This document shows, in pieces, positions 27,632 through 61,200 of a stretch of DNA of 64,000 nucleotides. Each line of letters starts with the position of its first letter. The stretch's first letter is position 1. The stretch is from Macrostomum lignano (Eukaryota). The notes beneath the pieces were generated by a model. The model did not search any database and was not told where the DNA came from. It saw only the letters and a program-made list of their open reading frames with translations. The stretch spans positions 269,233-333,232 of the forward strand of contig NIVC01000827.1 in NCBI GenBank assembly GCA_002269645.1. Direction: 5' to 3'. Made by a program: the position numbers and the translations under genes.

Positions 27632-31450
<3,819 letters not shown>

Positions 31451-35867: not shown

Positions 35868-36080
<213 letters not shown>

Positions 36081-36501
36081 ACCAGCGCCCTCCCAGTGTT
36101 GGAGGTGGCAACCAGTGGACTGAGCTAGCAGTTAAAACAAAACAGCTTTACTCGCTAGAGATCAATGCTTTTCTTTGCTGAGTTGGCAAGCTCGGCTGAG
36201 GGGGTGTGAGTCGTCGAAGAGCGTTTCGGGACGGTACGCACATTGAGCACAGGGACAATGGCTTCACTTCAGAATGTGAATCGATGCCTTAACGCGGAGG
36301 GTCCGACCTGGACGGAGCAGGAGGTGGCGCCACCACTTGCTGCTCACAGCCCGGTTTACGAGCCTCAGTGCTACGCTGGGAAACACCTGCTCCAACTCTG
36401 CTAGCCACCAGGCCATTGCCCACGAAGTCACCCCAGCGAACTCTCTCCACCCCCCGCATGCGTTCGCGAGTCGCCATTGGAAGCGGAAGACGCTATACTG
36501 C

Positions 36502-36509
36502 TATAACTA
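36502..36509 (+). promoter_or_regulatory. TATA-like box of gene A
   Basis: TATAACTA within a block (ctatactgctata...ccccagtccgcgagcttc) conserved with gene B, ~150 nt upstream of the ATG. Confidence 0.4.
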
Positions 36510-36657
36510 TGCTGCCGCCCCCAGTCCGCGAGCTTCTCCGACTTTCCAACACACGCCCAGTTCGAAAACTGCTATAGAAAATATCGTAGCAGTTCGCATT
36601 TTGTCGTTGAACAATCAACAACTGCAGGCTACTGTTTTGATTTGCTCAAGCAAGAGT

Positions 36658-39600
36658 ATGCTGCTGAAGGGCAGAGCTGCTGCGGTGAGCAGCTTGTTGC
36701 TGCTCGTTTTGCTTCTGGTTGGAACTCGCTGCCAAGCCAGACCAGTGCGAGGACCAGGTGAGTAGCACCTGATGTAGCAAACAGAGTAACAAATATTGTG
36801 CAAAACATCATAGCAACTACTTGATTGCTATGCACTTGAAGGACTTCCTTTGAAACCCGCAACTTTACAGAGTCTGAAGAGCACGAGGAATTTTATCCAG
36901 AAGAGGAAGAAGAGGAGTTTTTTCCCGGTAAAAAAGGAGGAAGTGTCGTTTCAGAAGAATGTGAGTAGTTTTTCGACAGTCCAATAAACATTAAAACGCG
37001 TTTAATAACTGCATTCACAACTGCGTAATGCTTGAATCGCTTCAGTGCTGAAAAAGCTCCTGGCCGGCCGAGATGAAGTGTCGCGGTCGTCAAAGGACAT
37101 CCAGAAAGGTAAATCTGTAAAAGAGATTTAGCACATTAAACTATTCAATTATTCTACAAGCTTGGAGCACCATTTTCGATCTGCAGGAAGGCGCAAATCC
37201 GATGGCAAAAACCCGAAGGTTGTGCCGCCCGCGAGGAAAAAGCGTAAGCCACAAATTCTGCATTTTCACTGTGAAATTCTTAGTAAAATTTGCTTTGTCT
37301 TTCAGTAGAGCGCAAAGTTCACAGCCTACCAAGAATTCACCCAAGCCGGAAAGTGGGCGGAAGCAGGAAGTCTGCGCCACCGGTGAGGAAAGGTAGGTCA
37401 GGAACTTTACCTGCATAATTTGGTTTTGCTCTTCTTGCCGTAAGACATGTTGGCGGAAAGAGTTCCCTACCAAAGAGTGAGTTTCAGATAACATCAGATA
37501 GCAAGCAAACATCAATCCAAATTGGCGGTTTCAGAGAAGAACCAAAAGAATCGTAGAATCGTTTTGGGAGGCTCCGAGAGCTCCCTGCCGCCTCAGTTTA
37601 GAAGTGAGTATCAGCGCCATGACTCACAATGGCGACATTTCTGACACACTAGCATGCAATTCATCAACAAGTTTGACTGTTTCAGAGAAGAACAAGAAGA
37701 GGATGATTGTAGGCGGCTCCGAGAGCTCCCTGCCGCCTCAGTTTAGAAGTGAGTATCAGCGCCATGACTCACAATGGCGACATTTCTGACACACTAGCAT
37801 GCAATTCATCAAGAAGTTTGACTGTTTCAGAGAAGAACAAGAAGAGGATGATTGTAGGCGGCTCCGAGAGCTCCCTGCCGCCTCAGTTTAGAAGTGAGTA
37901 TCAGCGCCATGACTCACAATGGCGACATTTCTGACACACTAGCATGCAATTCATCAAGAAGTTTGACTGTTTCAGAGAAGAACAAGAAGAGGATGATTGT
38001 AGGCGGCTCCGAGAGCTCCCTGCCGCCTCAGTTTAGAAGTGAGTATCAGCGCCATGACTCACAATGGCGACATTTCTGACACACTAGCATGCAATTCATC
38101 AAGAAGTTTGACTGTTTCAGAGAAGAACAAGAAGAGGATGATTGTAGGCGGCTCCGAGAGCTCCCTGCCGCCTCAATTCAGAAGTGAGTATCAGCGCCAT
38201 GACTAACAATGGCGACATTTCTGACACACTTTAGCATGAAATTGATCAACAAGTTTGACTGTTTCAGAGAAGAACAAGAAGAGGATGATTGTAGGCGGCT
38301 CCGAGAGCTCCCTACCGCCTCAGTTCAGAAGTGAGTATTAGCGCCATGACTCACAATGGCGACATTTCTGACACACTTTAGCATGAAATTGATCAAGAAG
38401 TTTGACTGTTTCAGAGAAGAACAAGAAGAGGATGATTGTAGGCGGCTCCGAGAGCTCCCTGCCGCCTCAGTTTAGAAGTGAGTATCAGCGCCATGACTCA
38501 CAATTGCGACATTTCTGACACACTTTAGCATGAAATTGATCAAGAAGTTTGACTGTTTCAGAGAAGAACAAGAAGAGGATGATTGTAGGCGGCTCCGAGA
38601 GCTCCCTGCCGCCTCAGTTTAGAAGTGAGTATCAGCGCCATGACTCACAATGGCGACATTTCTGACACACTAGCATGCAATTCATCAACAAGTTTGACTG
38701 TTTCAGAGAAGAACAAGAAGAGGATGATTGTAGGCGGCTCCGAGAGCTCCCTGCCGCCTCAGTTTAGAAGTGAGTATCAGCGCCATGACTCACAATGGCG
38801 ACATTTCTGACACACTAGCATGCAATTCATCAAGAAGTTTGACTGTTTCAGAGAAGAACAAGAAGAGGATGATTGTAGGCGGCTCCGAGAGCTCCCTGCC
38901 GCCTCAGTTTAGAAGTGAGTATCAGCGCCATGACTCACAATGGCGACATTTCTGACACACTAGCATGCAATTCATCAAGAAGTTTGACTGTTTCAGAGAA
39001 GAACAAGAAGAGGATGATTGTAGGCGGCTCCGAGAGCTCCCTGCCGCCTCAGTTTAGAAGTGAGTATCAGCGCCATGACTCACAATGGCGACATTTCTGA
39101 CACACTAGCATGCAATTCATCAAGAAGTTTGACTGTTTCAGAGAAGAACAAGAAGAGGATGATTGTAGGCGGCTCCGAGAGCTCCCTGCCGCCTCAGTTT
39201 AGAAGTGAGTATCAGCGCCATGACTCACAATGGCGACATTTCTGACACACTAGCATGCAATTCATCAAGAAGTTTGACTGTTTCAGAGAAGAACAAGAAG
39301 AGGATGATTGTAGGCGGCTCCGAGAGCTCCCTGCCGCCTCAGTTTAGAAGTGAGTATCAGCGCCATGACTCACAATGGCGACATTTCTGACACACTAGCA
39401 TGCAATTCATCAAGAAGTTTGACTGTTTCAGAGAAGAACAAGAAGAGGATGATTGTAGGCGGCTCCGAGAGCTCCCTGCCGCCTCAGTTTAGAAGTGAGT
39501 ATCAGCGCCATGACTCACAATGGCGACATTTCTGACACACTAGCATGCAATTCATCAACAAGTTTGACTGTTTCAGAGAAGAACAAGAAGAGGATGATTG

Positions 39601-42600
39601 TAGGCGGCTCCGAGAGCTCCCTGCCGCCTCAGTTTAGAAGTGAGTATCAGCGCCATGACTCACAATGGCGACATTTCTGACACACTAGCATGCAATTCAT
39701 CAAGAAGTTTGACTGTTTCAGAGAAGAACAAGAAGAGGATGATTGTAGGCGGCTCCGAGAGCTCCCTGCCGCCTCAATTCAGAAGTGAGTATCAGCGCCA
39801 TGACTAACAATGGCGACATTTCTGACACACTTTAGCATGAAATTGATCAACAAGTTTGACTGTTTCAGAGAAGAACAAGAAGAGGATGATTGTAGGCGGC
39901 TCCGAGAGCTCCCTACCGCCTCAGTTCAGAAGTGAGTATTAGCGCCATGACTCACAATGGCGACATTTCTGACACACTTTAGCATGAAATTGATCAAGAA
40001 GTTTGACTGTTTCAGAGAAGAACAAGAAGAGGATGATTGTAGGCGGCTCCGAGAGCTCCCTGCCGCCTCAGTTTAGAAGTGAGTATCAGCGCCATGACTC
40101 ACAATTGCGACATTTCTGACACACTTTAGCATGAAATTGATCAAGAAGTTTGACTGTTTCAGAGAAGAACAAGAAGAGGATGATTGTAGGCGGCTCCGAG
40201 AGCTCCCTGCCGCCTCAGTTTAGAAGTGAGTATCAGCGCCATGACTCACAATGGCGACATTTCTGACACACTAGCATGCAATTCATCAACAAGTTTGACT
40301 GTTTCAGAGAAGAACAAGAAGAGGATGATTGTAGGCGGCTCCGAGAGCTCCCTGCCGCCTCAGTTTAGAAGTGAGTATCAGCGCCATGACTCACAATGGC
40401 GACATTTCTGACACACTAGCATGCAATTCATCAAGAAGTTTGACTGTTTCAGAGAAGAACAAGAAGAGGATGATTGTAGGCGGCTCCGAGAGCTCCCTGC
40501 CGCCTCAGTTTAGAAGTGAGTATCAGCGCCATGACTCACAATGGCGACATTTCTGACACACTAGCATGCAATTCATCAACAAGTTTGACTGTTTCAGAGA
40601 AGAACAAGAAGAGGATGATTGTAGGCGGCTCCGAGAGCTCCCTGCCGCCTCAGTTTAGAAGTGAGTATCAGCGCCATGACTCACAATGGCGACATTTCTG
40701 ACACACTAGCATGCAATTCATCAAGAAGTTTGACTGTTTCAGAGAAGAACAAGAAGAGGATGATTGTAGGCGGCTCCGAGAGCTCCCTGCCGCCTCAATT
40801 CAGAAGTGAGTATCAGCGCCATGACTAACAATGGCGACATTTCTGACACACTTTAGCATGAAATTGATCAACAAGTTTGACTGTTTCAGAGAAGAACAAG
40901 AAGAGGATGATTGTAGGCGGCTCCGAGAGCTCCCTACCGCCTCAGTTCAGAAGTGAGTATTAGCGCCATGACTCACAATGGCGACATTTCTGACACACTT
41001 TAGCATGAAATTGATCAAGAAGTTTGACTGTTTCAGAGAAGAACAAGAAGAGGATGATTGTAGGCGGCTCCGAGAGCTCCCTGCCGCCTCAGTTTAGAAG
41101 TGAGTATCAGCGCCATGACTCACAATTGCGACATTTCTGACACACTTTAGCATGAAATTGATCAAGAAGTTTGACTGTTTCAGAGAAGAACAAGAAGAGG
41201 ATGATTGTAGGCGGCTCCGAGAGCTCCCTGCCGCCTCAGTTTAGAAGTGAGTATCAGCGCCATGACTCACAATGGCGACATTTCTGACACACTAGCATGC
41301 AATTCATCAACAAGTTTGACTGTTTCAGAGAAGAACAAGAAGAGGATGATTGTAGGCGGCTCCGAGAGCTCCCTGCCGCCTCAGTTTAGAAGTGAGTATC
41401 AGCGCCATGACTCACAATGGCGACATTTCTGACACACTAGCATGCAATTCATCAAGAAGTTTGACTGTTTCAGAGAAGAACAAGAAGAGGATGATTGTAG
41501 GCGGCTCCGAGAGCTCCCTGCCGCCTCAGTTTAGAAGTGAGTATCAGCGCCATGACTCACAATGGCGACATTTCTGACACACTAGCATGCAATTCATCAA
41601 CAAGTTTGACTGTTTCAGAGAAGAACAAGAAGAGGATGATTGTAGGCGGCTCCGAGAGCTCCCTGCCGCCTCAGTTTAGAAGTGAGTATCAGCGCCATGA
41701 CTCACAATGGCGACATTTCTGACACACTAGCATGCAATTCATCAACAAGTTTGACTGTTTCAGAGAAGAACAAGAAGAGGATGATTGTAGGCGGCTCCGA
41801 GAGCTCCCTACCGCCTCAGTTCAGAAGTGAGTATCAGCGCCATGACTCACAATGGCGACATTTCTGACACACTAGCATGCAATTCATCAAGAAGTTTGAC
41901 TGTTTCAGAGAAGAACAAGAAGAGGATGATTGTAGGCGGCTCCGAGAGCTCCCTGCCGCCTCAGTTTAGAAGTGAGTATCAGCGCCATGACTCACAATGG
42001 CGACATTTCTGACACACTAGCATGAAATTGATCAAGAAGTTTGACTGTTTCAGAGAAGAACAAGAAGAGGATGATTGTAGGCGGCTCCGAGAGCTCCCTG
42101 CCGCCTCAATTCAGAAGTGAGTATCAGCGCCATGACTAACAATGGCGACATTTCTGACACACTTTAGCATGAAATTGATCAAGAAGTTTGACTGTTTCAG
42201 AGAAGAACAAGAAGAGGATGATTGTAGGCGGCTCTGAGAGCTCCCTGCCGCCTCAATTCAGAAGTGAGTATCAGCGCCATGACTCACAATGGCGACATTT
42301 CTGACACACTAGCATGCAATTCATCAAGAAGTTTGACTGTTTCAGAGAAGAACAAGAAGAGGATGATTGTAGGCGGCTCCGAGAGCTCCCTACCGCCTCA
42401 GTTCAGAAGTGAGTATCAGCGCCATGACTCACAATGGCGACATTTCTGACACACTTTAGCATGAAATTGATCAAGAAGTTTGACTGTTTCAGAGAAGAAC
42501 AAGAAGAGGATGATTGTAGGCGGCTCCGAGAGCTCCCTACCGCCTCAGTTTAGAAGTGAGTATCAGCGCCATGACTCACAATGGCGACATTTCTGACACA

Positions 42601-45600
42601 CTTTAGCATGCAATTGTTCAAGAAGTTTGACTGTTTCAGAGAAGAACAAGAAGAGGATGATTGTAGGCGGCTCCGAGAGCTCCCTGCCGCCTCAGTTCAG
42701 AAGTGAGTATCAGCGCCATGACTCACAATGGCGACATTTCTGACACACTTTAGCATGCAATTCATCAAGAAGTTTGGCTGTTTCAGAGAAGAACAAGAAG
42801 AGGATGATTGTAGGCGGCTCCGAGAGCTCCCTACCGCCTCAGTTTAGAAGTGAGTATCAGCGCCATGACTTCTAAGCGTTTAAGAGTTACGCACGTTTTT
42901 AGCACACTGGACAGGGATTAAGGTAGTAGGCAGTAGCCAGGTGAGTGCGAAAAAAACTGGGAATCGACAAAAAGGACGCCGTAATCCCAGATGATGTCGA
43001 AGAAAAAAGGCAATATAATTCGTGAAACAAAATATGAAGCAAGGAGCGCTGATAGAGATTCAGTCGTCGAAGCTTGAGGCAGAAGTTTTGCCTTGACCTT
43101 ACATCTCGAGACTCTGTTGTGCTCCAAAAAGTTTTCTTTGGTTTCTTGAACGGTGCATGAAGCGATTGACTGGGTGAATTGCCATTTTCTGCAATTCATG
43201 CAGCAGTAAACCCTTAAGAGCGTTGAGGACATTTTTATTGATGATGGATCCGTGGTACGTGCGTTTATCTGCTTGAAAACTGGAAAAAGTGATGTATTTT
43301 AGCATCAGTCTCACTTTAAGCAGTCCAAAACAGTAGCCTAAGTTAGTGACTCAAGAAAGGACTCAAGATGGAACTCAGGACTCAAGGAAGGCAAGGCAAG
43401 ACTCTCTAAGACAATGTCGAGAACCCCTGGGAGTGGTGGTAGTTCCACAAATTCAACCTGGATGAGATGTCTGGGGGCTTCTTGTCCACTCGTCCGATCA
43501 GTGATTGATTGGCCTTCGGTCTGGTCCGGAGCTTCACTTCGGGCTCCTTTATGTCGATGAAGTTGACATCCTTTATGATACCATAGCTCGAGAGTCATTA
43601 TGAATCGATCAGCTGATCAATACTGCAGGTTCTGTGTCAGAAGAGGAGCGATCCAGCAAACGCTTCCCTTTGTCCGGATACGCAAAGGCCTCCAAGACTC
43701 CCGGGTCCAGAGGTGACAAGGACAAAGAGTTTAAAAGTGCGTCATAATTTGTCATACCCTGATAATTATTGTAGGACAGAATTTTCGTAGTTGAAAAAAC
43801 TCTGAAGAAAAATTCGAAAAAATCGATAAGCGATTTGGAATCAAAGTGACGGGCACCGGGAGCTCCCGACCGCCCCAGAATGGAAGTGAGTTGCGGTGGT
43901 CAATCTGTCAATCAAAGAAGACATTTCCAGTATCCTTAGGTCTTCAACTGCTCTGCCTCGTACTCCAGTTGATTTAAGATTCGAGTCGAACATTCGGCAG
44001 TTTAACCATTGTTAACTTTCCAAAACCATTGGAAAAGTCTGGCTTGGACGTTAGGAAACAGAAAGTTTTACTGTTTCTTTTAGCGACCCTCGAAAGGAAG
44101 GCAAGAATTTATACCGTGGACGACATAAATACCTGCATAAACGTGGGTCCACAAACACCCAGGGTGCGCAGATGTCCTCAGACAGCGAAAAATGTGGTGG
44201 CCGCTTGCACAATCGAATTCAGGGTCCTTAGTCCAAGTCTCAGGTGCTTCGTCTCTTCTAAAACAACCCAAAAAATTAAAATGCATTCAACTTTTCCAAG
44301 TGCACCCAGCTGACACTGAAACAAATGCAACTAAAACACTGCTACGCTTTAGAGAAGAACAAGAAGATCTCCAAGGCTCCTCAGGTGATCGTGGGCGGCT
44401 CTGAGAGCTCCCTGCCGCCTCAGTTTAGAAGTGAGATCCCTTTAATACTGCATCAGTTGTTATGATTTCAAAGCCAATCAAGAGCATCTGTGAACAAATA
44501 TGAGTCCGTTCATTCACTGCAGAGAAGCACCGCAAAGCCAAGAAGTCAGTTCCGAAGCCAGGCTCCTCGAAGGCCTCACTACCTCCCAAGAAACCCAAGA
44601 AGATTAAGAGTGAGTCTGTTTCTCCATTTTGCCGATTTTAAACCCTTGAATCAAGCAGTGTCTCCTGCGGTTGCAGAAATCGTCAGGCACCTTGGAATCA
44701 AAGCTGCTGAGCGCAAAAGTGAGTCTAAATTCTTCTAATTTTCTTTCGTTTTCCGAAATGATCTCATGTTAGCATGCACAGGCGACGCCCCTTGCGCGTA
44801 TGCGCTTGCAGAGCAGTCGAGAGGGGCAGGCAGCAGCAGCCTGAGGGGTCAGCGCAAGCGCTTGCAAGTCAGCGACGAGGCAATCAGTCAGAGTGACCAA
44901 GCGGGTCTGGCCGCTCCACAGTCGCTCGGTCGGCTGGTGCAGCAGGGCCAGGGCCAGAAGGACGGCCTCACCGCGGCCAAGGGCCCGTAGGCAGTCGCCC
45001 AGCAGCATTTGACGATGCCGGCGCAGGGTAGCGCTCACCAGCGCGGGCCATCAGAGCGTTGGTCGACATGCGCTCCAGATAGTGCACTCCAAGCGCGTAA
45101 CGCAGCAGCGATCGGTAGAGCGCGTCCAGGGCTCGCGCTCGCATCTGCGTCAGCGGCACAGCCTCCATGCCGTACAGAAGGATCGGCTCTACGACCGCGT
45201 GGAACAGGCACACCTTCAGGTCGTCTCTGGCAGCTGAAGTGAAGACGTTCATGAAGAAGGGAGCGCGCGTCGCGCCAGGCCTGGTTCCTCCTGTCGGAGA
45301 CAATGGCACCGGGTTTATCACCAGGGTGTCGAGGTACCGGAAGTCCTCGCACGTCGCGGTGCCGTCTCCTTTGGACAGCGTGAGATTTGGGGCGGTATTT
45401 GGGCCCTCGTGCAGCGCCTCCGTCTTGCGAGAATTCACCAGCAGCCCAAGACGGGCGCCCTCGTCGCCGAGTCTTGTGATAGTGCGCTGGGCAGCGGCTG
45501 GGTCGCGACAGAGCAGCGCGATTTCGTCAGCATATGCGAGAGCGGGAAGCAAAAGGAATCGAAGCAAAACGAGAGGGCGTCTGGACCTTCGGTGTAGAAT

Positions 45601-48600
45601 CAGTAGCTGTCATCCTCGTGGAAGGACTGATGCAGCGCATAAGTCCAAAACTACGAGGAAGCGCAGCAGAACCAGCATGTCGCCCTGAAGGACGCCTGGG
45701 CTGATGCCGAACTCTTCTTCTGGACCGCCGCCGCTTGACATGACAAAGGCACTGGAGTCAGGATAGAGATCTATCACTGCGTACGCGTAGCAGGTACGCC
45801 ATAATGAGATAGGAGCCACGCGATAGCTCTGTGGTGGATCCGCCCGGGCAGAAGCCACTTTGGAGGCTCAGCAGCAGTGGGTCGAGGCCGGGTTGGATGC
45901 CGTTGCGCAGAATTGCGTTCAGCAGCTATCTCGGCTGGTGGAGGCGCCTTTCTTTGAGATGGAGACAATATTGGAGGTCCGACATTGCTGAGGAGCTAAG
46001 GCGGCCTCGTTGCCTCCAAGGCTGCAGTGCTTGTTCAGCAGGCTGGTGATGATCGGGGTGAGCTCAGGCAGCTTCAGGACCCTGGGAGGGATGGCGTCCA
46101 CCCCAGCGGCGGCATCAGCTCGCATGGTCATCAGTGCTCGGCCAACCTCGCCTGCAGTGGTGGGGCCGGTGTCGAAGGCGCCTGATTGGACTGAAGCGAA
46201 GTCTGGGATCGGCAGGAGAGGCACAGTTGAAGCGGGCGCGTTGAGCACCTCGCGGTAGTGGGTGGCCAGCCGGGCCTTCCGGTGCTCGGTGGAATCAGCA
46301 CCGACGATGGTGTCGGGCTTCGGCTTCCTGCCGGTCAGCTGGTTGATGGCCCTTCTGGAAGCGCTATGGCGGCCGTTGTCAGTGGCGAGTTGGGTTTTGC
46401 TCACTGCCACTTCGATGAAGACTTCAGTCGCTGGGCATAGATGCGCTGCAGCTCGTCCGTGGCAGCACTGGCCTGGGCGCTGTCATGGCCGTGGAGGGCA
46501 GCAGTGCTCTCCTTCCCTTGGAGACGATGAGACTGCGGTCCCACAGAGCCTTTGGATGGTTTTCCTGTCTCCGTGGGAGAAGCGCTGCAGCATCCTCGAC
46601 GGCGTGATGGAAAGACTCGAAAGACTCGTTCAAAGAAATTTGGAAGCTTTCTGAGGCGCTTTCGCATGGTGCCATTGACAGCCATCAGATCTCTGGCCTG
46701 GAAAAAACTGGATAGGAAAGGTGAGTTGGCATTGGGGATGCCACAGCTGTTCTTCACCAGGCGGCCGTCGGCTGGAAATTGCGAGTTGAAATCCCCTGCA
46801 CCAAACTGTCGCCGATGTTCTTGAACTGCCAGGATGGAGACGTTGAGGTCAGCGGCCAGCCTTGTCAGCTCCTGCAGTCTCCATGTCTGACTGAGAGCGC
46901 GGGCATTGAAGGTGGCGACCCGAAGCTGGTCTTGAAGATGCGGCCGACTTGTGCCCTTGTTGGCTCTGCTTGTCACTGATCTCAGCAATGTACAGTGTTG
47001 CATTTGACTGAAAACACCAATAATTGTACTCCTTGAGAATAACAAGAAGATCTCCAAGGCTCCTCAGGTGGGCGGCTCCGTGAGCTCCCTGGCGCCTCAG
47101 TTTAGAAGTATAAGATCTGTTTAATACTGCATCAGTTGTTGTGATTTCCAAGCCAATCAAGAGCATCTGTAAACAAATATGAGTCCGGTCATTCACTGCA
47201 GAGAAGAAGCGCAAAGCCAAGAAGTCAGTTCCGAAGCCAGACTCCTCGAAGGCCTCACTACCTCCCAAGAAACCCAAGAAGATTAAGAGTGAGTCTGTTT
47301 CTCCATTTTGCCGATTTTAAACCCTTGAATCAAGCAGTGTCTCCTGTGGTTGCAGAAATCGTCAGGCACCTTGGAATCAAAGCTGCTGGGCAAAGTGAGT
47401 TTAGAGTATTCTAACTACATGTACCTTCGCTGTCACCTTCGATCTCGTAGTAATATTTCTACTTTGTAACAGAGAAGGAATATTGATTAAGGTGTTTGAC
47501 TGTTTCAGAGAATAACAAGAAGATCGCCAAGGCTCCTCAGGTGATCGTGGGCGGCTCCGAGAGCTCCCTGGCGCCTCAGTTCAGAAGTGAGATCCCTTTA
47601 TATTATTATATCAATTTTTTATTTCCAAGCCAATCAAGAGCATCTGGGAACAAATACGAGTATGAGTCCGGTCATTCACTGCAGAGAAGAACCGCAAAGC
47701 CAAGAAGTCAGTTCCGAAGCCAGGCTCCTCGAATGCCTCACTACCTCCCAGGAAACCCAAGAAGAATAAAAGTGAGTCTGTTTTCTGTTTTCGTTGGTGT
47801 CGACGAGAAGCGACGAGACACCCTATGCAGGTCCTTTCCAGGGTCCTTCCCTATGCAGGGCGCCCGACATGAGCCTCGAGTGAAGAGGGGGCCTTCTTAT
47901 AATAAAGTGGCGCCCCTGATGAAAGATTCTGGCTGTGCGCCTTGGCACAAGTCTGACTGCTTCATCATGTTTATTGCCCCTCGATGCATTTTGACCCAAA
48001 GGAGATGTAGCTAGATACTTGAAGTATTAAGAAAAGTTCCAGTGCTGTGTTGATACGAAAGGGAATAATAGTAAATACTTGAGCTAGCTCAATGTAATTT
48101 GGCTATAACTTCTTCATGAAATTACAGAGCAACAAATACTGCTTTCATTTTTGCTGCCTCAACGAACACGGTGCTTTAAGTTGACAAAAACTCTCTCTTT
48201 TATACCCACAATCCTCTGGGATTCCAAGGGAGTGACCTTGGATGGGATTCTCTATGTTTGCATCGGTGTCACGTTAAAAGTTCAGTCTGACGGACAGAGA
48301 ACCGCGCCGACTAAGCTCGGCCGTCCAAGTGACTTTCGGCCTTCTTAATCCCACTAGTGAAAATCGTCATTTTTATCGGTTTTTTATTTTTCAGAAAAGC
48401 AAAAGAAGAGGAAAATTTTATTCAGACACGTTCGCACCGGTGGCGATGAAAGCTCGACTTCAACTGGCTCTGGAAGTGAGTGCATGCCATCTATGCTCGT
48501 ATCCTCCCACATGCGATCACTCTTTTTCGAAAATTTTATTTTTACGAATCGTTCGGTTTTTTAGCACCTCGAAAAGTAAATATTGGGAAGAAGAAAAGAA

Positions 48601-49331
48601 TTCAAAAACACAAGGCCGGCGGAAGTGGCGTCAAAAAGACCGGTGGAAGTGGTGTCAAAAAGACCAGTGGAAGTGGCGTCAAAAAGGTTGGCGGAAGTGG
48701 CGTAAAAAATTCCAGTGGAAGTGGTGCCAAAAAGGCTGGCGGAAGTACCATCAAAAAGGTTGGCGGAAGTGGCGTCAAAAAGGCCGGCGGAAGTGGTGTC
48801 AAAAAGGCTGGCGGAAGTGGCGTCAAAACAGTTGGCGGAAGTGGCGTCAAAAAGACCAGTGGAAGTGGCGTCAAAAAGGTTGGCGGAAGTGGCGTCAAAA
48901 AGGTTGGCGGAAGTGGCGTCAAAAAGGCCGGCGGAAGTGGTGTCAAAAAGGCTGGCGGAAGTGGCGTCAAAACAGTTGGCGGAAGTGGCGTCAAAAAGAC
49001 CAGTGGAAGTGGCGTCAAAAAGGTTGGCGGAAGTGGCGTCAAAAAGGTTGGCGGAAGTGGCGTCAAAAAGGCCGCCGGAAGTGGCGTCAAAAAGGCCGGC
49101 GGAAGTGGCGTCAAAAAGGCCGCCGGAAGTGGCGTCAAAAAGGCCGGCAGAAGTGGCGTCAAAAAGGCCGCCGGAAGTGGCGTCAAAAAGGCCGGCGGAA
49201 GTGCCGTAAAAAATTCCAGTGGAAGTGGCGTCAAAAAGGCCGGTGGAAGTGGCGTCAAAAAGGCCGCCGGAAGTGGCGTTAAACCGGCCCCTCTGAAGGG
49301 ACCCAGCAAGGGAAAGGCGAACCAGCCTTAA
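36658..49331 (+). CDS. Gene A: secreted, highly basic repetitive protein / putative multi-copy peptide precursor (~1400 aa if all exons are used)
   Basis: Exon 36658-36757 encodes a signal peptide (MLLKGRAAAVSSLLLLVLLLVGTRCQA). Then phase-1 exons 36871-36960 (E-rich), 37046-37108, 37187-37243, 37306-37392, 37535-37603, 36 x 63-nt repeat exons (to 42849), 43629-43736, 44353-44430, 44523-44609, 44677-44718, 47202-47288, 47356-47394, 47509-47586, 47685-47771, 48395-48475 and 48565-49331 (stop). Every junction is GT-AG and in frame. AATAAA at 49620. Splicing in 42871-44340 is only partly resolved. Confidence 0.8.
37604..42871 (+). repeat. 145/147-bp exon-intron tandem array A (36 units)
   Basis: Donors GTGAGT at 37604, 37749, ... 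42850 (37 donors). Unit = 82/84-nt intron ending tttgactgtttcAG + 63-nt exon. Confidence 0.97.
44767..46976 (-). mobile_element. Degenerate non-LTR retrotransposon (LINE, RTE-like: AP endonuclease + reverse transcriptase) in an intron of gene A
   Basis: APE motif LRVATFNARAL...ILAVQEHR. RT motifs AAGVDAIPPRVLK, GVLQGD, LAYADEIALL, CEDFRYL and HAVVEPILLYGME, split over several frames. Candidate 8-bp TSD TGATCTCA at 44759-44766 and 46977-46984. Confidence 0.88.
48613..49283 (+). repeat. 24-bp coding minisatellite (~28 x GGSGVKKA-type octapeptide) in the last coding exon of gene A
   Basis: Unit ggcggaagtggcgtcaaaaaggcc. The frame is fixed by the phase-1 acceptor at 48564/48565. Confidence 0.9.
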
Positions 49332-50965
49332 GGTAGGTAGGCCGAAGGCATTACTTCCAAGGGTGTTGAACGCATTGTAAGCTGAGCAATGGCAAGCTGA
49401 TCCAATTCCTAATCTTCTCTTTCAGGTGCCGACTGTCGAAGTCAGAATTGCATTCTGCGAGGCTGATGATCCGAAACATGACCAGACAAAATATATTATT
49501 TTTTCTCGGTCCGGTCAAAGTGAACAAACATTTCCTTTCTCCCCGACAATTCACATCTAGTCGCTTATATTTTGAAAGTGCTGTCATCCTAACTACCATT
49601 ACGATGTTGAGCTGAAGAAAATAAAAGCCAGAATTTAATAATGAATTGTTTTGATTCCTAAACAGGCTGTGGTTATTCAAGCAAGTTTCAAAGAACCTAT
49701 ATGAATTATTTGCGTTATTTTAACTCTGGAAAATACTGAACGATGAAATTTCATAAATGGCAAATATTTGGTGAATCAATACTATGACCGCCAGTCAGTC
49801 AACAGTGGTTCGTATTATTCTAACAAAGCAGCCCCCCATCAGGCGCGTTCTCATTAGTCCCGAAGAAGTACACAAAGCACTTTAATGCAGAGTATTTCAG
49901 AGCACAAAAACGCTCGAAAACAAACAAATTTAATTATTCTAACAAAATCTAAATTATCATTTGTTCAGAAAGAATTAGTTTTTTGTTATTAATAACAAAG
50001 CGTTAAATTAAAAAATTAAATTTATTAAATCATAAACTAGATTTACATATTTCTATGTTGAATACAATCCTCGATTACTTCGGAAAGACAGCTTCTGGTT
50101 GTGAGTTCGTATAGTTCCTTCAAAGTTTAAATTAACAAAGTTGTGTAAATACTGCTAGAAAATGTGTAATTTGTGCTTCTTAACGTTAAAAATATGATAA
50201 ACATTTCACCAGAAGGAAAATTAATATTTCTCTACATGCGCTTTTTGACTCCCCAGATTTCACTTTAGCCGTGTGGAACCCGCCTGAGATGCTGTCTTTG
50301 CCTCATCATCACTCGCTTGACTGGCTGGCAAAGTAGGACTTCAGTGTTGTCGTTGGAAGGTTCTGACATTTTTAAACTCAGAACAAAAACTGAAGCAGCT
50401 AGTAGCAACTTTGGCGTCATTGTGACAGCAGAAGTGACAACGTATATAAAAAGCGATGGTTTATCCTTTGTCTCAACATTCGTGTGAGCATCGTGTAAAT
50501 TGCATCAGAATATCCCAGTGCGTGACAACGATTGACTGTCACGCAATCGTTGTCACGTGCTGCGACCGCTGATTCTTTGCATTGTTATGCTGCTTGACGA
50601 TTGTATTGTTCTGCATAAAAATGTGAATAATGATAGTCAAATTGCTAGACAATGAAAAACGCGCACATTAGGCGCAAAAACAACGCAGTAGTCAGAGACT
50701 GTTCATCAGAAGTTGCTCATTAAAACTGAAACGTGCAATCCTTGAAGTGACAGTTCTCGAATAAGCGAACTGCGCGTTCCGAATGCATCCGACCTGCAGA
50801 TTAATGGACATTGTAAAAATTCAGTTTCTATATAGCCATTAGTATAGCCACTAATTTACTTACAATGTTGACATATTATACTTACCATGCTTCACCCGCA
50901 TCTCCTGTGTCACCTCCACTGAAGCATACATGTAGGTCGCACGGGTCGGTCAGTCGTCGACACTA

Positions 50966-54444: not shown

Positions 54445-54775
<331 letters not shown>

Positions 54776-55884
54776 GTGGGCATCCAGAAAGTCGTGCTTG
54801 ATCCTCGTTGGATATTCTCCTATGAAGGGCCCTCGTCGGTCTTGTTCTTCTTCAACCCCTTCTTCTTCTTCTTCAATCGTTTTTTCGCCTTGCGGCGTAG
54901 GTAACCTCTTCTTCTACATCACCGAGCTCTTCTTCGTCTTCTTCTCCAATCTCTTCGATAATCTCCTCTTCATCTTCTACATGTACCAAAGCGGCCATCT
55001 TTTTCTTATAAAATGTGCGAAGTAGATTTTTAAGTGTGCACTTTTCAAGTTACCTTTGGAAAAGTTAGGAGAGGGAGAGTGAGCCTGTGCTTGGTGTCTA
55101 AAGTGAATGTTGGCTTTTTAAATTGAATGTGCCAGCACCCCCATAGCACCCCCGTGCAGACGTTTTATTCCCCCCACAAATAGGGACATCAACTCGCCCC
55201 ACTCGTATGGCTCTTCAGCTGAGGAAATAAGAAAGAAATCGGCTGGCTCGAGATCTCTCGAGTGCGGATCGTGAATTGACTCAAAGCGATATGGTTTAAA
55301 AACCATGTAAAAGGATTGCTCGACACTAACCTGATAGGCAAGTTCGCGTCCATCGCATTCAATAAAGGCGCAAAATACGTTGCAGAAATCAATTAACGCA
55401 TCCATTGGAAATGACGCAGGGCGCATCGTAGTTGAAATTTGGTTTTTTTAGAGTTTGGAGTTGACGTGGCAATTCTCTCCTCCCATATTACTCCTCTCTC
55501 CAAGCCTTCCCGACATTGTTGCTTTACGAGCGTATAGCAAGGGTTGGCGTTCAATTGCCCAGACAGCAGACTATGCAAAACAATGAAACCTTCGAGGTCA
55601 TTCTGTCTGGACAGCCAGCTACGAGCCATTTGCCAAGCGACTCAAGATTATTGTCGATAAATTTATACCATGCGACGACATACTGAAGTTAGAAAATTTT
55701 AAAATTTAACGTTTCAGCGTCTACTTAAGGAGTCTAGAAGGGTAAATAATAAATAATAGCGTCTGCCCTCTGTCCGCCAGTCTGTTTGTGCTTCGCATTG
55801 GCAAAAATTACTGGAGAACATTCAGCAGTCTGCAACGCCCCCACATATCTCGACTGCTTCTTCCGATGTGATGTAATCTGATGT

Positions 55885-57995: not shown

Positions 57996-58110
57996 ATTCG
58001 AATAATTATCGAGCGCAACTCGTCTGGCCCTGCCAGTTGGTGGGCACGCATGTCGTAGTGCACAGTGGGCAGCACAGGGATTGGCTCCAGGGTCAGGTCC
58101 ACTATACTGC

Positions 58111-58118
58111 TATAAATA
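58111..58118 (+). promoter_or_regulatory. TATA box of gene B
   Basis: TATAAATA at the start of the A/B homology block, ~145 nt upstream of the ATG. Confidence 0.5.
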
Positions 58119-58262: not shown

Positions 58263-61200
58263 ATGCCGCTGAAGGGCAGAGCAGCTGCAGTGAGCAGCTT
58301 GTTGCTGCTCGTTTTGCTTCTGGTTGGCACTCGCTGCCAAGCCAGACCAGTTCCAGGATCAGGTGAGTATAAGCAGGCTTGGCTTGACTGACTACTCTAT
58401 GTAGCAAACAGAGTAACTAATATTGTGCTTGCATAGCAACACTTGATTACCGTACACTCGAAGGACCTCCTTTGAAACCCGCAACATTACAGAGTCTGAT
58501 GATGACCACGAGGAACTTTTTCCAGAAGAGGAAGAAGAGGAAGAAGAAGAAGAGCCTTCTACAGGTGAAGAAGGTGACGAGAGGCATGGAGGAGGAAGTG
58601 TCGTTACAGCAAGAAGTGAGTAACGGGTTTTCCACTGCTTAGCTCGTACTATTAAAGATGAAACTGGGTACTCTGTCCTAATAACAGCGGAATAATTGAA
58701 ACGCTTCAGTTCTGCAACAGCTCAAAACCAGCCGAGATGAAACCTCAAAAGACTTCCTAAAAGGTAAATGCAACAAATATGTCACAAAAAACAACCATTC
58801 AACACGCTCGAAGCGCCATTTATAGGCTGAAAGAAAAGCGCAAAACTACATTCAAAACGCAAAGGTTATGTAAGGCCACTAATCTAATGGGACATGGCGA
58901 CATTTCTGACACACTTTAGCATGAAATTGATCAAGAAGTTTGACTGTTTCAGAGAAGAACAAGAAGAGGATGATTGTAGGCGGCTCCGAGAGCTCCCTGC
59001 CGCCTCAGTTTAGAAGTGAGTATCAGCGCCATGACTCACAATGGCGACATTTCTGACACACTTTAGCATGAAATTGATCAAGAAGTTTGACTGTTTCAGA
59101 GAAGAACAAGAAGAGGATGATTGTAGGCGGCTCCGAGAGCTCCCTGCCGCCTCAGTTCAGAAGTGAGTATCAGCGCCATGACTCACAATGGCGACATTTC
59201 TGACACACTTTAGCATGAAATTGATCAAGAAGTTTGACTGTTTCAGAGAAGAACAAGAAAAGGATGATTGTAGGCGGCTCCGAGAGCTCCCTGCCGCCTC
59301 AGTTTAGAAGTGAGTATCAGCGCCACGACTCACAATGGCGACATTTCTGACACACTTTAGCATGCAATTGTTCAAGAAGTTTGACTGTTTCAGAGAAGAA
59401 CAAGAAGAGGATGATTGTAGGCGGCTCCGAGAGCTCCCTGCCGCCTCAGTTCAGAAGTGAGTATCAGCGCCATGACTCACAATGGCGACATTTCTGACAC
59501 ACTTTAGCATGAAATTGATCAAGAAGTTTGACTGTTTCAGAGAAGAACAAGAAGAGGATGATTGTAGGCGGCTCCGAGAGCTCCCTGCCGCCTCAGTTTA
59601 GAAGTGAGTATCAGCGCCACGACTCACAATGGCGACATTTCTGACACACTTTAGCATGCAATTGATCAAGAAGTTTGACTGTTTCAGAGAAGAACAAGAA
59701 GAGGATGATTGTAGGCGACTCCGAGAGCTCCCTGCCGCCTCAGTTCAGAAGTGAGTATCAGCGCCATGACTCACAATGGCGACATTTCTGACACACTTTA
59801 GCATGCAATTGATCAAGAAGTTTGACTGTTTCAGAGAAGAACAAGAAGAGGATGATTGTAGGCGGCTCCGAGAGCTCCCTGCCGCCTCAGTTTAGAAGTG
59901 AGTATCAGCGCCATGACTCACAATGGCGACATTTCTGACACACTTTAGCATGAAATTGATCAAGAAGTTTGACTGTTTCAGAGAAGAACAAGAAGAGGAT
60001 GATTGTAGGCGGCTCCGAGAGCTCCCTACCGCCTCAGTTCAGAAGTGAGTATCAGCGCCATGACTCACAATGGCGACATTTCTGACACACTTTAGCATGA
60101 AATTGATCAAGAAGTTTGACTGTTTCAGAGAAGAACAAGAAGAGGATGATTGTAGGCGGCTCCGAGAGCTCCCTACCGCCTCAGTTCAGAAGTGAGTATC
60201 AGCGCCATGACTCACAATGGCGACATTTCTGACACACTTTAGCATGAAATTGATCAAGAAGTTTGACTGTTTCAGAGAAGAATAAGAAAAGGATGATTGT
60301 AGGCGGCTCCGAGAGCTCCCTGCCGCCTCAGTTTAGAAGTGAGTATCAGCGCCACGACTCACAATGGCGACATTTCTGACACACTTTAGCATGCAATTGT
60401 TCAAGAAGTTTGACTGTTTCAGAGAAGAACAAGAAGAGGATGATTGTAGGCGACTCCGAGAGCTCCCTGCCGCCTCAGTTCAGAAGTGAGTATCAGCGCC
60501 ATGACTCACAATGGCGACATTTCTGACACACTTTAGCATGCAATTGATCAAGAAGTTTGACTGTTTCAGAGAAGAACAAGAAGAGGATGATTGTAGGCGG
60601 CTCCGAGAGCTCCCTGCCGCCTCAGTTTAGAAGTGAGTATCAGCGCCATGACTCACAATGGCGACATTTCTGACACACTTTAGCATGAAATTGATCAAGA
60701 AGTTTGACTGTTTCAGAGAAGAACAAGAAGAGGATGATTGTAGGCGGCTCCGAGAGCTCCCTACCGCCTCAGTTCAGAAGTGAGTATCAGCGCCATGACT
60801 CACAATGGCGACATTTCTGACACACTTTAGCATGAAATTGATCAACAAGTTTGACTGTTTCAGAGAAGAACAAGAAGAGGATGATTGTAGGCGGCTCCGA
60901 GAGCTCCCTACCGCCTCAGTTCAGAAGTGAGTATCAGCGCCATGACTCACAATGGCGACATTTCTGACACACTTTAGCATGAAATTGATCAAGAATTTTG
61001 ACTGTTTCAGAGAAGAACAAGAAGAGGATGATTGTAGGCGGCTCCGAGAGCTCCCTACCGCCTCAGTTTAGAAGTGAGTATCAGCGCCATGACTCACAAT
61101 GGCGACATTTCTGACACACTTTAGCATGAAATTGATCAAGAAGTTTGACTGTTTCAGAGAAGAACAAGAAAAGGATGATTGTAGGCGGCTCCGAGAGCTC

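What the first reader, a model, noticed from the sequence alone, without database searches (positions are those of the whole stretch)
36658..49331. Gene A may be a multi-copy peptide precursor, or an uncut polycationic secreted protein
Seen: signal peptide, E-rich acidic exon, then repeats in which MIVGGSESSLPPQF is flanked by KKR and RKK. Established: prohormone convertases cut at dibasic sites and carboxypeptidase trims basic residues; repetitive precursors with acidic pro-regions are typical of invertebrate peptides. The lack of a C-terminal Gly implies no amidation. Inference: up to 36 identical 14-mers per precursor (plus ~20 from gene B). I do not recognise the peptide. Alternative: each repeat has net charge +5, so the intact protein could be a glue, structural or antimicrobial secretion; K/R-rich repetitive adhesive proteins such as Mlig-ap1 are known in flatworms.
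Basis: partly seen in the sequence, partly recalled or inferred. Interest (0 to 1): 0.75.

Follow-up and report, generated by a model that had tools for sequence, protein, structure and literature searches.

The report
Flatworm secreted polycationic repeat-protein gene pair
Two neighbouring genes of the flatworm Macrostomum lignano, with no relatives found in other species, encode a secreted, strongly positively charged protein built from up to 36 identical 21-residue units, each on its own small exon; it is more likely an intact glue- or mucus-type polycation than a 36-copy peptide hormone precursor, but only expression and mass-spectrometry data can decide.

Summary
Gene A (36658-49331, + strand) assembles into a 1421-aa open frame. 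It uses canonical GT-AG introns and only phase-1 exons. Its parts are a signal peptide, an acidic exon, a basic linker, 36 exons of 63 nt that all encode KNKKRMIVGGSESSLPPQFR(K), further K-rich exon modules, and 28 KAGGSGVK units.

All four variable exon columns in the array are synonymous. Gene B (58263 onward) is a shorter tandem paralogue with signs of decay.

The organism is Macrostomum lignano. Three UniProt fragment models map to the 3' half of gene A: A0A1I8ITX3, A0A1I8JMB9 and A0A1I8JLA8, auto-named "H15 domain" or "Bindin". None contains the array. I found no homologue outside this species and no supported Pfam domain.

The mature protein has pI 11.8, net charge +326, no Cys or Trp and only two Tyr, and a composition typical of disordered proteins.

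I favour an intact secreted polycationic repeat protein (about 0.5) over a peptide polyprotein (about 0.27). Sequence alone cannot settle this.

It is a new member of a known kind, of moderate interest.

The parts
36493..36657 (+). Conserved upstream region and 5' UTR of gene A, with a TATA-like element at 36502
   Evidence: 36493-36916 is 82.7% identical to 58102-58541 upstream of gene B. TATAA lies at 36502 and TATAAA at 58111.
36658..36757 (+). Gene A exon 1: start codon and signal peptide (MLLKGRAAAVSSLLLLVLLLVGTRCQA|RP)
   Evidence: Hydropathy peaks at residues 7-20, with a basic n-region and C-Q-A at positions -3 to -1. 31 of 33 residues are identical in gene B.
36871..36960 (+). Gene A exon 2: acidic, E-rich segment
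   Evidence: Phase 1, net -9 over residues 27-64. It differs from gene B only by substitutions and in-frame indels of 3, 12 and 18 nt.
37046..37392 (+). Gene A exons 3-5 (37046-37108, 37187-37243, 37306-37392): basic linker
   Evidence: Canonical GT-AG introns, all phase 1, net +18.
37535..37603 (+). First, divergent repeat exon (KNQKNRRIVLGGSESSLPPQFR, 69 nt)
   Evidence: An out-of-frame degenerate partial copy at 37445-37476 is left out of the model (read).
37686..42849 (+). Array of 36 exons of 63 nt, each followed by an 82/84-nt GT-AG intron; every exon encodes KNKKRMIVGGSESSLPPQFR(K)
   Evidence: There are 4 variable exon columns, all synonymous. Three identical 3-unit blocks of the 147-bp unit type recur at units 4-6, 15-17 and 22-24.
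43629..43885 (+). Two post-array exons (43629-43736; 43808-43885, the latter with a weak acceptor and therefore uncertain)
   Evidence: They keep the frame open in phase 1. No independent model covers them.
44353..44718 (+). Module X1: variant repeat exon (KKNKKISKAPQVIVGGSESSLPPQFR) plus two K-rich exons (44523-44609, 44677-44718)
   Evidence: Exons 44523-44609 and 44677-44718 are present in UniProt model A0A1I8ITX3.
44780..47000 (-). Degenerate non-LTR retrotransposon fragment inserted in an intron of gene A (approximate limits)
   Evidence: GC rises to 0.53-0.55. Broken minus-strand ORFs lie at 44968-47057. Weak RVT_1 hit, E 2.5e-4.
47044..47394 (+). Module X2: duplicate of X1. Its first exon is degenerate (2-nt and 6-nt deletions, GTATAA donor). 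Exons 47202-47288 and 47356-47394 are intact but are skipped in the UniProt model.
47509..47771 (+). Module X3: variant repeat exon (KNNKKIAKAPQVIVGGSESSLAPQFR) and K-rich exon 47685-47771
   Evidence: Both exons are in A0A1I8ITX3.
48395..48475 (+). Penultimate coding exon (KKQKKRKILFRHVRTGGDESSTSTGSG)
   Evidence: Present in A0A1I8ITX3.
48565..49331 (+). Last coding exon: 28 KAGGSGVK-type units (24-bp repeat, 48612-49283), tail PAPLKGPSKGKANQP, stop TAA at 49329-49331
   Evidence: Its first 45 residues match A0A1I8ITX3 at 98%.
49333..49425 (+). Intron just after the stop codon. Its acceptor (next exon starts at 49426) is used in the UniProt model from a cryptic donor at 48696|48697 inside the KAGGSGVK repeat. 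The AATAAA signal is at 49620.
   Evidence: The 3' region 49392-49692 is 77% identical to 62660-62959 of gene B.
58263..58763 (+). Gene B exons 1-3 (58263-58362 signal peptide, 58493-58615 acidic, 58710-58763)
58953..62247 (+). Gene B array: 23 repeat exons, period 147. 18 encode the same unit as gene A and 4 carry amino-acid changes. Exon 61452-61513 has a 1-nt deletion that creates a premature stop.
62332..62508 (+). Gene B 3' end: a truncated repeat fused to a short remnant of the KAGG tail. The A-type tail frame (ending at 62508) cannot be reached by phase-1 splicing; the open reading stops at TGA 62424-62426. The AATAAA signal is at 62882.

Best explanation
Gene A is a real, lineage-restricted protein-coding gene of Macrostomum lignano.

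After removal of a 26-residue signal peptide, its product is a roughly 1400-residue secreted chain that is probably disordered. About 28% of residues are Lys or Arg, at roughly +5 per 21 residues, and net charge is about +326. Short weakly hydrophobic or anionic patches (MIVGGSESSLPPQF) alternate with K-rich spacers, followed by a Gly/Ser/Ala/Val/Lys tail.

I propose that it is exported largely intact from a gland cell and acts as a polyelectrolyte. It would bind and condense polyanions such as acidic or sulfated glycans and acidic proteins, giving cohesion to a secretion: glue, mucus, rhabdite, egg-attachment or seminal material. The KR-rich regions of Mlig-ap1 are thought to work this way.

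The array arose and is kept uniform by unequal crossing-over or gene conversion of whole exon-intron units, within gene A and between genes A and B. Because all exons are symmetric in phase 1, copy number can change without breaking the frame.

Shown: gene structure, open frame, coding constraint, secretion signal, charge and composition, species, absence of known domains.
Inferred: that the protein stays uncut, that it is disordered, the electrostatic mechanism, and the tissue.
For: - Coding status. A 1421-aa ORF runs across 53 phase-1 exons with canonical splice sites. All four polymorphic exon columns are synonymous while introns vary. Exon differences between A and B include only in-frame indels (3, 12, 18, 9 nt), whereas intron indels are mostly not multiples of three (22, 4, 1, 3, 6 nt). 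The TATA-like element, signal peptide, 3' UTR and AATAAA are conserved between A and B. The 3' exons are used in independent UniProt models.
- Polycation character. pI 11.76, net +326, K 20%, S 14%, G 13%, P 8%, one Cys (inside the signal peptide), two Tyr, no Trp. The charge-hydropathy values fall on the natively unfolded side.
- The basic character is not confined to the spacers. The post-array modules (net +68) and the KAGGSGVK tail (net +63, no acidic residue) are polycationic and hold no discrete peptide.
- Variant exons such as GSSKASLPPKKPKK show the unit drifting towards more Lys rather than keeping the peptide.
- There is no R-X-[KR]-R furin motif anywhere.
- Precedent in the same species. 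The KR-rich repeats of Mlig-ap1 are secreted intact and act by charge; heparin blocks adhesion. Their repeat regions are poorly recovered in other species' transcriptomes.
- From my own knowledge, homogenised one-exon-per-repeat layouts are typical of structural repeat proteins.
Against: - No expression or protein data were available to me.
- Every unit is bounded by tribasic sites that prohormone convertases could cut.
- The conserved part of all variant units is the C-terminal core ...SSL(P/A)PQF-R, which is the pattern expected of a peptide family.
- The gene was not among the ten adhesive-gland transcripts found in published screens, all of which belong to Mlig-ap1 or Mlig-ap2, so a role in the duo-gland glue is unlikely.
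- dN/dS is about 1 between A and B outside the signal peptide, and gene B is decaying. This shows weak constraint on at least part of the family.
- AlphaFold gave a moderately confident solenoid for the tail in 2 of 5 models. That conflicts with pure disorder, although there is no PDB match.
Confidence: 0.5

Rival explanations
1. Gene A is a polyprotein precursor. In a convertase-expressing neuron or secretory cell it would be cut after KKR and RKK and trimmed by a carboxypeptidase. This would release 36 identical non-amidated 14-mers (MIVGGSESSLPPQF) plus N-terminally extended variants such as ISKAPQVIVGGSESSLPPQF. These would act as a signalling, pheromonal or defensive peptide.
For: - The layout is a signal peptide, then an acidic N-terminal segment, then 36 identical copies, each flanked by KKR and RKK.
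- The full 21-residue unit is under purifying selection.
- The four variant units keep the C-terminal core SSL(P/A)PQF followed by R-K-K and are also bounded by basic pairs.
- M. lignano has a nervous-system PC2 homologue with a severe RNAi phenotype.
- From my own knowledge, high copy numbers are known in peptide precursors of other phyla.
Against: - There is no Gly for amidation, and no acidic or neutral spacers; the spacer is purely basic (RKKNKKR).
- About 45% of the protein consists of other K-rich repeats. If cut at KK these would yield about 20 copies of AGGSGV and similar fragments.
- At 1421 aa and net +326 it lies far from the flatworm prohormones I know of.
- Each copy sits on its own exon, which is unusual for neuropeptide genes.
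- The acidic 'pro-region' is not conserved in sequence between A and B (dN/dS about 1).
- The peptide does not appear in the searched literature.
Confidence: 0.27
2. The array is mainly a by-product of this genome's strong tendency to expand minisatellites. On this reading a young orphan gene carries an exon-intron unit that was amplified recently, copy number has no specific function, and the protein is dispensable or only weakly useful.
For: - The 64-kb window holds more than 25 minisatellite and microsatellite arrays, including a 3.8-kb (GACA)n tract.
- Units are 97-100% identical, introns included, which implies very recent amplification or homogenisation.
- dN/dS is about 1 in the N-terminal exons.
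- Gene B carries a frameshift, four amino-acid changes and an out-of-frame tail.
- Module X2 is partly degenerate.
- No homologue was found outside the species.
Against: - Gene A has 0 non-synonymous against 4 synonymous variable columns, and no frame-breaking change in any of its 36 exons.
- The exon indels between A and B are all in frame.
- The promoter region, signal peptide and polyadenylation signal are conserved.
- The 3' exons are included in existing gene models.
Confidence: 0.15
3. The repeat is a protease-interacting motif array. One form of the idea is a calpastatin-subdomain-B-like inhibitor motif (G-x-x-E-x-S-L-P-P-x-F-R). Another is a decoy of the R|IVGG zymogen-activation site of trypsin-like proteases, possibly captured from a protease exon.
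For: - Pfam Calpain_inhib scores 35 bits (cut-off 22) on a 114-residue stretch of the array and 29 bits on four units. The hit disappears when either IVGG or PP/F is mutated.
- The IVGG and RR-IVLGG strings resemble serine-protease activation sites. This resemblance is recalled from my own knowledge and was not tested.
Against: - The score is the sum of identical weak matches. A single unit gives no hit, and 4 of 14 shuffled or reversed four-unit controls reach an equal or better best E-value against unrelated families, several above their curated cut-offs.
- There was no phmmer match to calpastatin chains in the PDB.
- Pfam Trypsin is absent from the hit lists even at E up to 10.
- Calpains are cytosolic, whereas this protein has a signal peptide.
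Confidence: 0.03

Closest known systems
UniProt A0A1I8ITX3 and A0A1I8JMB9 ('H15 domain-containing protein') and A0A1I8JLA8 ('Bindin'), Macrostomum lignano
   Same: These are models of the same locus. They are identical to window exons 44523-44609, 44677-44718, 47509-47586, 47685-47771, 48395-48475 and the start of the last exon.
   Different: They are fragments with no start codon, signal peptide or MIVGGSESSLPPQF array. Two of them include antisense pieces of the intronic retrotransposon as exons. Their automatic names have no Pfam support.
Mlig-ap1, the cohesive adhesive protein of M. lignano (GenBank MH586844; PMC6410801)
   Same: It is from the same species and is secreted. It has very large Lys/Arg-rich repetitive regions with an extreme positive charge, had no homologue in NCBI nr when described, and has a charge-based mechanism supported by heparin and cation experiments.
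   Different: Mlig-ap1 is 5,407 aa and has a Cys-rich core of C-type lectin, vWD, C8, TIL and EGF domains. Gene A has no Pfam domain and no Cys after the signal peptide. None of the published Mlig-ap1 or Mlig-ap2 repeat peptides occurs in it. The published adhesive-gland transcripts all belong to ap1 or ap2.
Multi-copy peptide precursors cut at basic sites, such as molluscan FMRFamide and cnidarian Antho-RFamide precursors, yeast alpha-factor and honeybee apidaecin (recalled from my own knowledge)
   Same: They share a signal peptide followed by many tandem copies of one short peptide, each bounded by basic residues.
   Different: Those precursors usually have a Gly amidation donor or acidic spacers, carry several copies per exon, and are not polycationic overall. 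Here there is no Gly, the spacers are purely basic, each copy has its own exon, and further K-rich repeat domains are present.
Homogenised exon-per-repeat structural protein genes: spider Flag silk, Chironomus Balbiani-ring BR3, titin PEVK exons (recalled from my own knowledge)
   Same: They consist of iterated exon-intron modules in which introns are homogenised together with exons. Symmetric exon phase allows copy-number change, and the products are disordered repeat proteins. Here intron and exon units are 97-100% identical, and multi-unit blocks recur.
   Different: The sequences, composition and taxa are unrelated. This is an analogy of architecture only.
DOPA-free Lys/Gly/Ser/Ala/Val-rich underwater cement proteins such as barnacle cp19k, and polybasic sandcastle-worm cement proteins (recalled from my own knowledge)
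   Same: The KAGGSGVK x28 tail has the same restricted amino-acid palette and positive charge.
   Different: I did not run a sequence comparison. Tyr is nearly absent, so DOPA chemistry is excluded. The resemblance is in composition only.

Membership tests
Convertase-processed multi-copy peptide precursor | N-terminal signal peptide | tested here: met
   There is a basic n-region, a hydrophobic core at residues 7-20, and C-Q-A at positions -3 to -1. This was judged by inspection and hydropathy only; no dedicated predictor was available.
Convertase-processed multi-copy peptide precursor | Repeated peptide copies, each bounded by di- or tribasic cleavage sites | tested here: met
   36 of 36 units read ...KKR-MIVGGSESSLPPQF-RKK....
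Convertase-processed multi-copy peptide precursor | C-terminal Gly as amidation donor (typical, not obligatory) | tested here: not met
   The peptide ends ...PQF and is followed directly by RKK.
Convertase-processed multi-copy peptide precursor | The rest of the precursor consists of spacers or pro-regions rather than further basic repeat domains (typical) | tested here: not met
   The post-array modules carry net +68 and the KAGGSGVK tail net +63; the whole protein carries +326.
Convertase-processed multi-copy peptide precursor | The mature peptide is detected, and the gene is expressed in convertase-positive cells | not testable with these tools
   No transcript or peptide data were accessible. 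A PC2 homologue exists in the species.
Convertase-processed multi-copy peptide precursor | The peptide is conserved across species while the spacers vary | tested here: inconclusive
   No orthologue was found. The word-indexed searches were swamped by low-complexity candidates and demonstrably missed A0A1I8ITX3, so absence is weak evidence.
Mlig-ap1-type flatworm adhesive protein | Large Lys/Arg-rich repetitive regions with extreme positive charge | tested here: met
   K+R is 28%, pI 11.76 and net charge +326, compared with the description.
Mlig-ap1-type flatworm adhesive protein | Cys-rich core with C-type lectin, vWD, C8, TIL and EGF domains | tested here: not met
   No Pfam family was found at E up to 0.01. 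There is no Cys after the signal peptide.
Mlig-ap1-type flatworm adhesive protein | Shares the Mlig-ap1 repeat peptides (KSRKVN, SRKPRRKNRKSRKP) | tested here: not met
   None of the published peptides is present.
Mlig-ap1-type flatworm adhesive protein | Expression in adhesive gland cells and presence in footprints | not testable with these tools
   The published adhesive-gland transcripts all map to ap1 or ap2.
Linker histone H1/H5 (UniProt automatic name 'H15 domain') | Globular winged-helix linker-histone domain; nuclear protein without a signal peptide | tested here: not met
   There is no Pfam hit on the gene A model, the tail or A0A1I8JLA8. The full gene has a signal peptide. The name probably reflects the Lys/Ala/Gly-rich tail.
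Bindin (UniProt automatic name of A0A1I8JLA8) | Match to the Bindin family profile | tested here: not met
   hmmscan of P0223 against Pfam found no family even at E up to 10.
Calpastatin inhibitory repeat (Pfam PF00748) | A significant profile match that is more than repeat-summed chance | tested here: inconclusive
   The array scores 29-35 bits, above the cut-off of 22. A single unit gives nothing, and 4 of 14 shuffled or reversed controls do as well against other families. There is no PDB calpastatin match. I treat this as chance.
Homogenised exon-per-repeat structural gene architecture (Flag silk, BR3, PEVK type) | One repeat per exon, symmetric phase, introns homogenised together with exons | tested here: met
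   Exons are 63 nt and all phase 1. Introns are 82/84 nt with only 10 of 84 variable columns, and multi-unit blocks recur. This is an architectural class, not a homologous family.

The most novel reading that the evidence does not exclude
Gene A is a true polyprotein that releases 36 identical copies of a previously unknown, non-amidated 14-residue peptide (MIVGGSESSLPPQF) from one precursor, together with extended variants. That would be among the highest copy numbers I know of in a bilaterian. It would also be unusual in having one copy per exon, with copy number tunable by unequal crossing-over or exon skipping. The polybasic remainder might serve as a second product.
Probability: 0.25. Interest if true: 0.7.

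Novelty: new member of a known kind. Interest (0 to 1): 0.4.

Why it matters
M. lignano is the main laboratory model for reversible bioadhesion, regeneration and sexual selection in flatworms. Its known glue works through a secreted polycation.

A second, domain-free polycationic repeat protein would be a simple candidate for charge-driven cohesion or coacervation in a secretion. It encodes a perfectly uniform 21-residue unit, which could be made synthetically.

If it is instead a 36-copy peptide precursor, it would reveal a new flatworm peptide and a new gene layout for such precursors.

The locus also shows how existing annotation fails on such genes. The array is absent from all three UniProt models, which are fragments with misleading automatic names.

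Finally, the pair of genes is a clean example of concerted evolution of whole exon-intron units. Coding constraint is visible as synonymous-only variation.

Tried and rejected
1. Homology.
- Two word-indexed searches with condensed gene A proteins returned nothing, or only same-locus M. lignano fragments.
- The first was probably swamped by poly-E and poly-K candidates. Both missed A0A1I8ITX3.
- An exhaustive phmmer search with the last exon gave 468 hits. Among the 150 best, the only ones listed, all but the same-locus fragment are unrelated repeat-rich proteins, mostly Gly/Ser-rich.

2. Organism.
- A cadherin exon gave only 27-32% identical hits, and Rfam found nothing.
- The species came from the UniRef name of P0104.

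3. Exact-product look-ups of window ORFs, P0104 and P0222 found no contigs.

4. A degenerate DNA pattern for IVGGSESSLPPQF had no match in JGI metagenomes.

5. Literature.
- The peptide and the UniProt accessions are absent from the searched papers.
- They are also absent from the supplements of the seminal-fluid in situ screen.

6. The Pfam Calpain_inhib hit was rejected after shuffle controls and a negative PDB search. The weak Bowman-Birk, AMIN and similar hits are of the same kind.

7. Origin from a trypsin activation-site exon has no profile support.

8. The H15 and Bindin names are not supported.

9. AlphaFold on the KAGGSGVK tail gave a solenoid with pLDDT 69 in two of five models and 37-51 in the others. 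Foldseek found no significant match (best E 0.057, TM at most 0.28). I treat this as a repeat artefact.

10. The intron hairpin (CGCCAT...ATGGCG) folds no better than shuffled sequence, z = -0.21.

11. An unspliced reading of the arrays is excluded: no ORF of 150 aa or more lies in either array, although gene B's 147-nt period is a multiple of three.

12. The exhaustive protein search and the structure predictor accept only contiguous window translations. The spliced array protein could therefore not be submitted.

Full report
**What is in the sequence**

The window is animal DNA, dense with minisatellites. Between 37570 and 42870 there is a 145-bp tandem repeat with 36.4 copies at 97% identity. 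A sister array of 147-bp units lies at 58894-62370.

Reading the units shows that each is a 63-nt exon bounded by TTTCAG| and |GTGAGT, followed by an 82- or 84-nt intron. The period is not a multiple of three in gene A, so the frame can only be kept by splicing. No unspliced ORF of 150 aa or more exists in either array.

In phase 1, all 36 exons at 37686-42849 encode exactly KNKKRMIVGGSESSLPPQFR, with the junction codon adding K. A divergent first copy at 37535-37603 encodes KNQKNRRIVLGGSESSLPPQFR.

From the ATG at 36658, I could join 53 exons into one 1421-codon frame ending at TAA 49329-49331. The exons comprise five N-terminal ones, 37 repeat exons and eleven downstream ones. All have canonical GT-AG borders and all are in phase 1.

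**Is it a real gene?**

Several independent signs say yes.

- Within array A, four exon columns vary and all four are synonymous third positions. The chance of this is about 0.002, or 0.012 if only transitions are counted. By comparison, 10 of 84 intron columns vary, including a 2-nt indel.
- Gene B (ATG at 58263) is a tandem paralogue. Its flanks are only 77-83% identical to gene A, yet it keeps a TATA-like element about 155 nt upstream of the ATG, the 5' UTR, a nearly identical signal peptide (31 of 33 residues), the 3' UTR and an AATAAA signal.
- The exon differences between A and B include indels of 3, 12, 18 and 9 nt, all in frame. Intron indels are 22, 4, 1, 3 and 6 nt.
- An exhaustive phmmer search with the last exon found a 181-aa spliced protein, UniRef100_A0A1I8ITX3 from Macrostomum lignano, that is identical to six of my predicted 3' exons. 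A further search found A0A1I8JMB9 and its cluster mate A0A1I8JLA8 from the same locus.

This fixes the organism as M. lignano and gives independent support for the downstream exon borders. These models are N-terminally truncated fragments. They lack the array, and two of them wrongly include antisense pieces of an intronic retrotransposon. Their automatic names, 'H15 domain-containing protein' and 'Bindin', have no Pfam support.

**The protein**

After a predicted signal peptide (MLLKGRAAAVSSLLLLVLLLVGTRCQA|RP) come these regions:

| Region | Net charge |
|---|---|
| Acidic exon | -9 |
| Basic linker | +18 |
| Array of 37 units | +183 (+5 per 21 residues) |
| Post-array modules | +68 |
| 28 KAGGSGVK-type units plus a short tail | +63 |

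The post-array modules hold three further IVGGSESSL(P/A)PQF units and exons of the type KKSVPKPGSSKASLPPKKPKKIK.

Overall the protein has pI 11.76 and net charge +326. Composition is K 20%, S 14%, G 13% and P 8%. There is no Cys after the signal peptide, no Trp, and only two Tyr. The charge-hydropathy values lie on the natively unfolded side.

No Pfam domain is found. No homologue was found outside M. lignano in the protein collections or in metagenome DNA. The word-indexed protein searches were visibly weakened by low-complexity words, so that absence is only moderate evidence.

**Evolution of the locus**

Units of arrays A and B are 97-100% identical, introns included, while the flanking gene parts have diverged by about 20%. 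Array A also contains three identical three-unit blocks of the 147-bp type typical of B, at units 4-6, 15-17 and 22-24. This is concerted evolution by unequal exchange or conversion of whole exon-intron units, within and between the two genes.

Modules X1, X2 and X3 downstream are recent duplicates. A degenerate non-LTR element is inserted between X1 and X2, and the first exon of X2 is broken.

Gene B looks to be decaying. It has four amino-acid-changing columns and a 1-nt deletion in exon 61452-61513 that gives a premature stop after 17 units. It also has a truncated terminal repeat whose frame does not reach the A-type tail. The single-base deletion could be an assembly error.

Outside the signal peptide, dN/dS between A and B is about 1. 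The acidic N-terminal part therefore keeps its character but not its sequence.

**Peptide precursor or intact polycation?**

For the precursor reading:
- Every unit is bounded by KKR and RKK.
- The unit is under purifying selection.
- All variant units keep the C-terminal SSL(P/A)PQF-R core.
- The species has a neuronal PC2 homologue.

Against the precursor reading:
- There is no Gly for amidation and no acidic spacer.
- Nearly half of the protein consists of other Lys-rich repeats that would be shredded into meaningless fragments at KK sites.
- The variant exons drift towards more Lys rather than preserving a peptide.
- There is no R-X-[KR]-R site.
- The size and charge are far from flatworm prohormones as I know them.
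- The one-exon-per-repeat, fully homogenised layout resembles structural repeat genes.

M. lignano already provides a precedent for a secreted polycation acting by charge. This is Mlig-ap1, whose KR-rich repeats mediate cohesion and are neutralised by heparin. Gene A is not Mlig-ap1: it has no vWD, C8, TIL, EGF or lectin core and none of its repeat peptides. The published adhesive-gland transcripts all belong to ap1 or ap2, so a different secretion is more likely than the duo-gland glue.

My estimates are:
- intact polycationic secretory protein, about 0.5
- polyprotein precursor, about 0.27
- recently expanded gene of little function, about 0.15
- protease-interacting motif array and other readings, the remainder

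**Leads that failed**

A Pfam Calpain_inhib match passed the curated cut-off (35 bits on 114 residues of the array). The motif G-x-x-E-x-S-L-P-P-x-F-R does resemble calpastatin subdomain B as I recall it. However, a single unit gives no hit, and the score is a sum over identical copies. In addition, 4 of 14 shuffled or reversed four-unit controls reached equal or better E-values against unrelated families. PDB calpastatin chains were not matched. I treat this match as chance.

The IVGG string suggested capture of a trypsin activation-site exon, but no profile support was seen.

AlphaFold predicted a solenoid for the KAGGSGVK tail, with pLDDT 69 in two of five models, and there was no significant structural neighbour. 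This is probably a repeat artefact.

The intron's small hairpin is not unusual.

**Verdict**

It is a lineage-restricted, secreted, polycationic tandem-repeat protein gene with a decaying paralogue. That makes it a new member of a known kind, not a new kind of system.

The precursor idea remains open and is the more interesting possibility. It can be tested cheaply with existing RNA-seq data and a trypsin-free mass-spectrometry run.

Noticed in passing
window 2773-4866 (+): ORFs with leucine-rich repeats (Pfam LRR_4, LRR_8) are followed by a weak B3_4 domain, an LRRC47-like arrangement. A 21-bp x29 minisatellite (2787-3401) lies inside an open frame and would encode PQVQSES heptads, so this may be another coding minisatellite.
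   Followed up: partly
window 8623-17600 (+): Several long exons encode cadherin domains of a large Fat- or protocadherin-like gene. The best database hits are only 27-32% identical.
   Followed up: partly
window 25337-26407 (-): A 356-aa open exon carries a DSL domain and EGF repeats, as in a Delta/Serrate-type Notch ligand.
   Followed up: partly
window 27632-31450; 54482-54771; 35868-36080; 55875-57997: Simple-repeat load is extreme: (GACA)n of 3.8 kb with 955 copies, (AGAC)n, (ATCT)n, a 21-bp x97 array, and more than 25 minisatellites in 64 kb.
   Followed up: no
window ~44780-47000 (-): A GC-rich, frameshifted non-LTR reverse-transcriptase fragment sits inside an intron of gene A (RVT_1, E 2.5e-4). 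UniProt models A0A1I8JMB9 and A0A1I8JLA8 take antisense pieces of it (45995-46255, 46431-46490) as coding exons.
   Followed up: partly
window 52236-52586 (+): A 116-aa ORF between genes A and B has a weak QRICH1-domain match (E 0.0015, below the cut-off). It may be a remnant of a Crypton-type element.
   Followed up: no
window 48696|48697 to 49425|49426: UniProt model A0A1I8ITX3 splices from a GT inside the fourth KAGGSGVK unit to the acceptor of the intron that follows the stop codon. This gives the alternative C-terminus ADCRSQNCILRG and drops 24 of the 28 units. Every KAGGSGVK unit carries a similar GGAA|GTGGCG site, so variable tail length by alternative splicing is possible, or this is an artefact of the older assembly.
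   Followed up: partly
window 37686-42849, first 21 nt of each repeat exon: The Lys-rich spacer is encoded by a 90% purine (GAR)n stretch (AGAAGAACAAGAAGAGGATGA), compared with 45% purine in the rest of the exon. This resembles a purine-rich exonic splicing enhancer. The basic spacer may therefore also be constrained at the RNA level for recognition of these 63-nt exons.
   Followed up: no
window 48567-49328 (+): AlphaFold2 without an alignment models the KAGGSGVK tail as a regular solenoid with a beta bridge every 8 residues. pLDDT reaches 85 in the centre, but only in 2 of 5 models, and no PDB structure matches.
   Followed up: partly
method note (versus 32): The word-indexed protein search missed an identical 170-residue match (A0A1I8ITX3) when the query held low-complexity runs. 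Negative results from that tool on this kind of protein should be treated with caution.
   Followed up: yes
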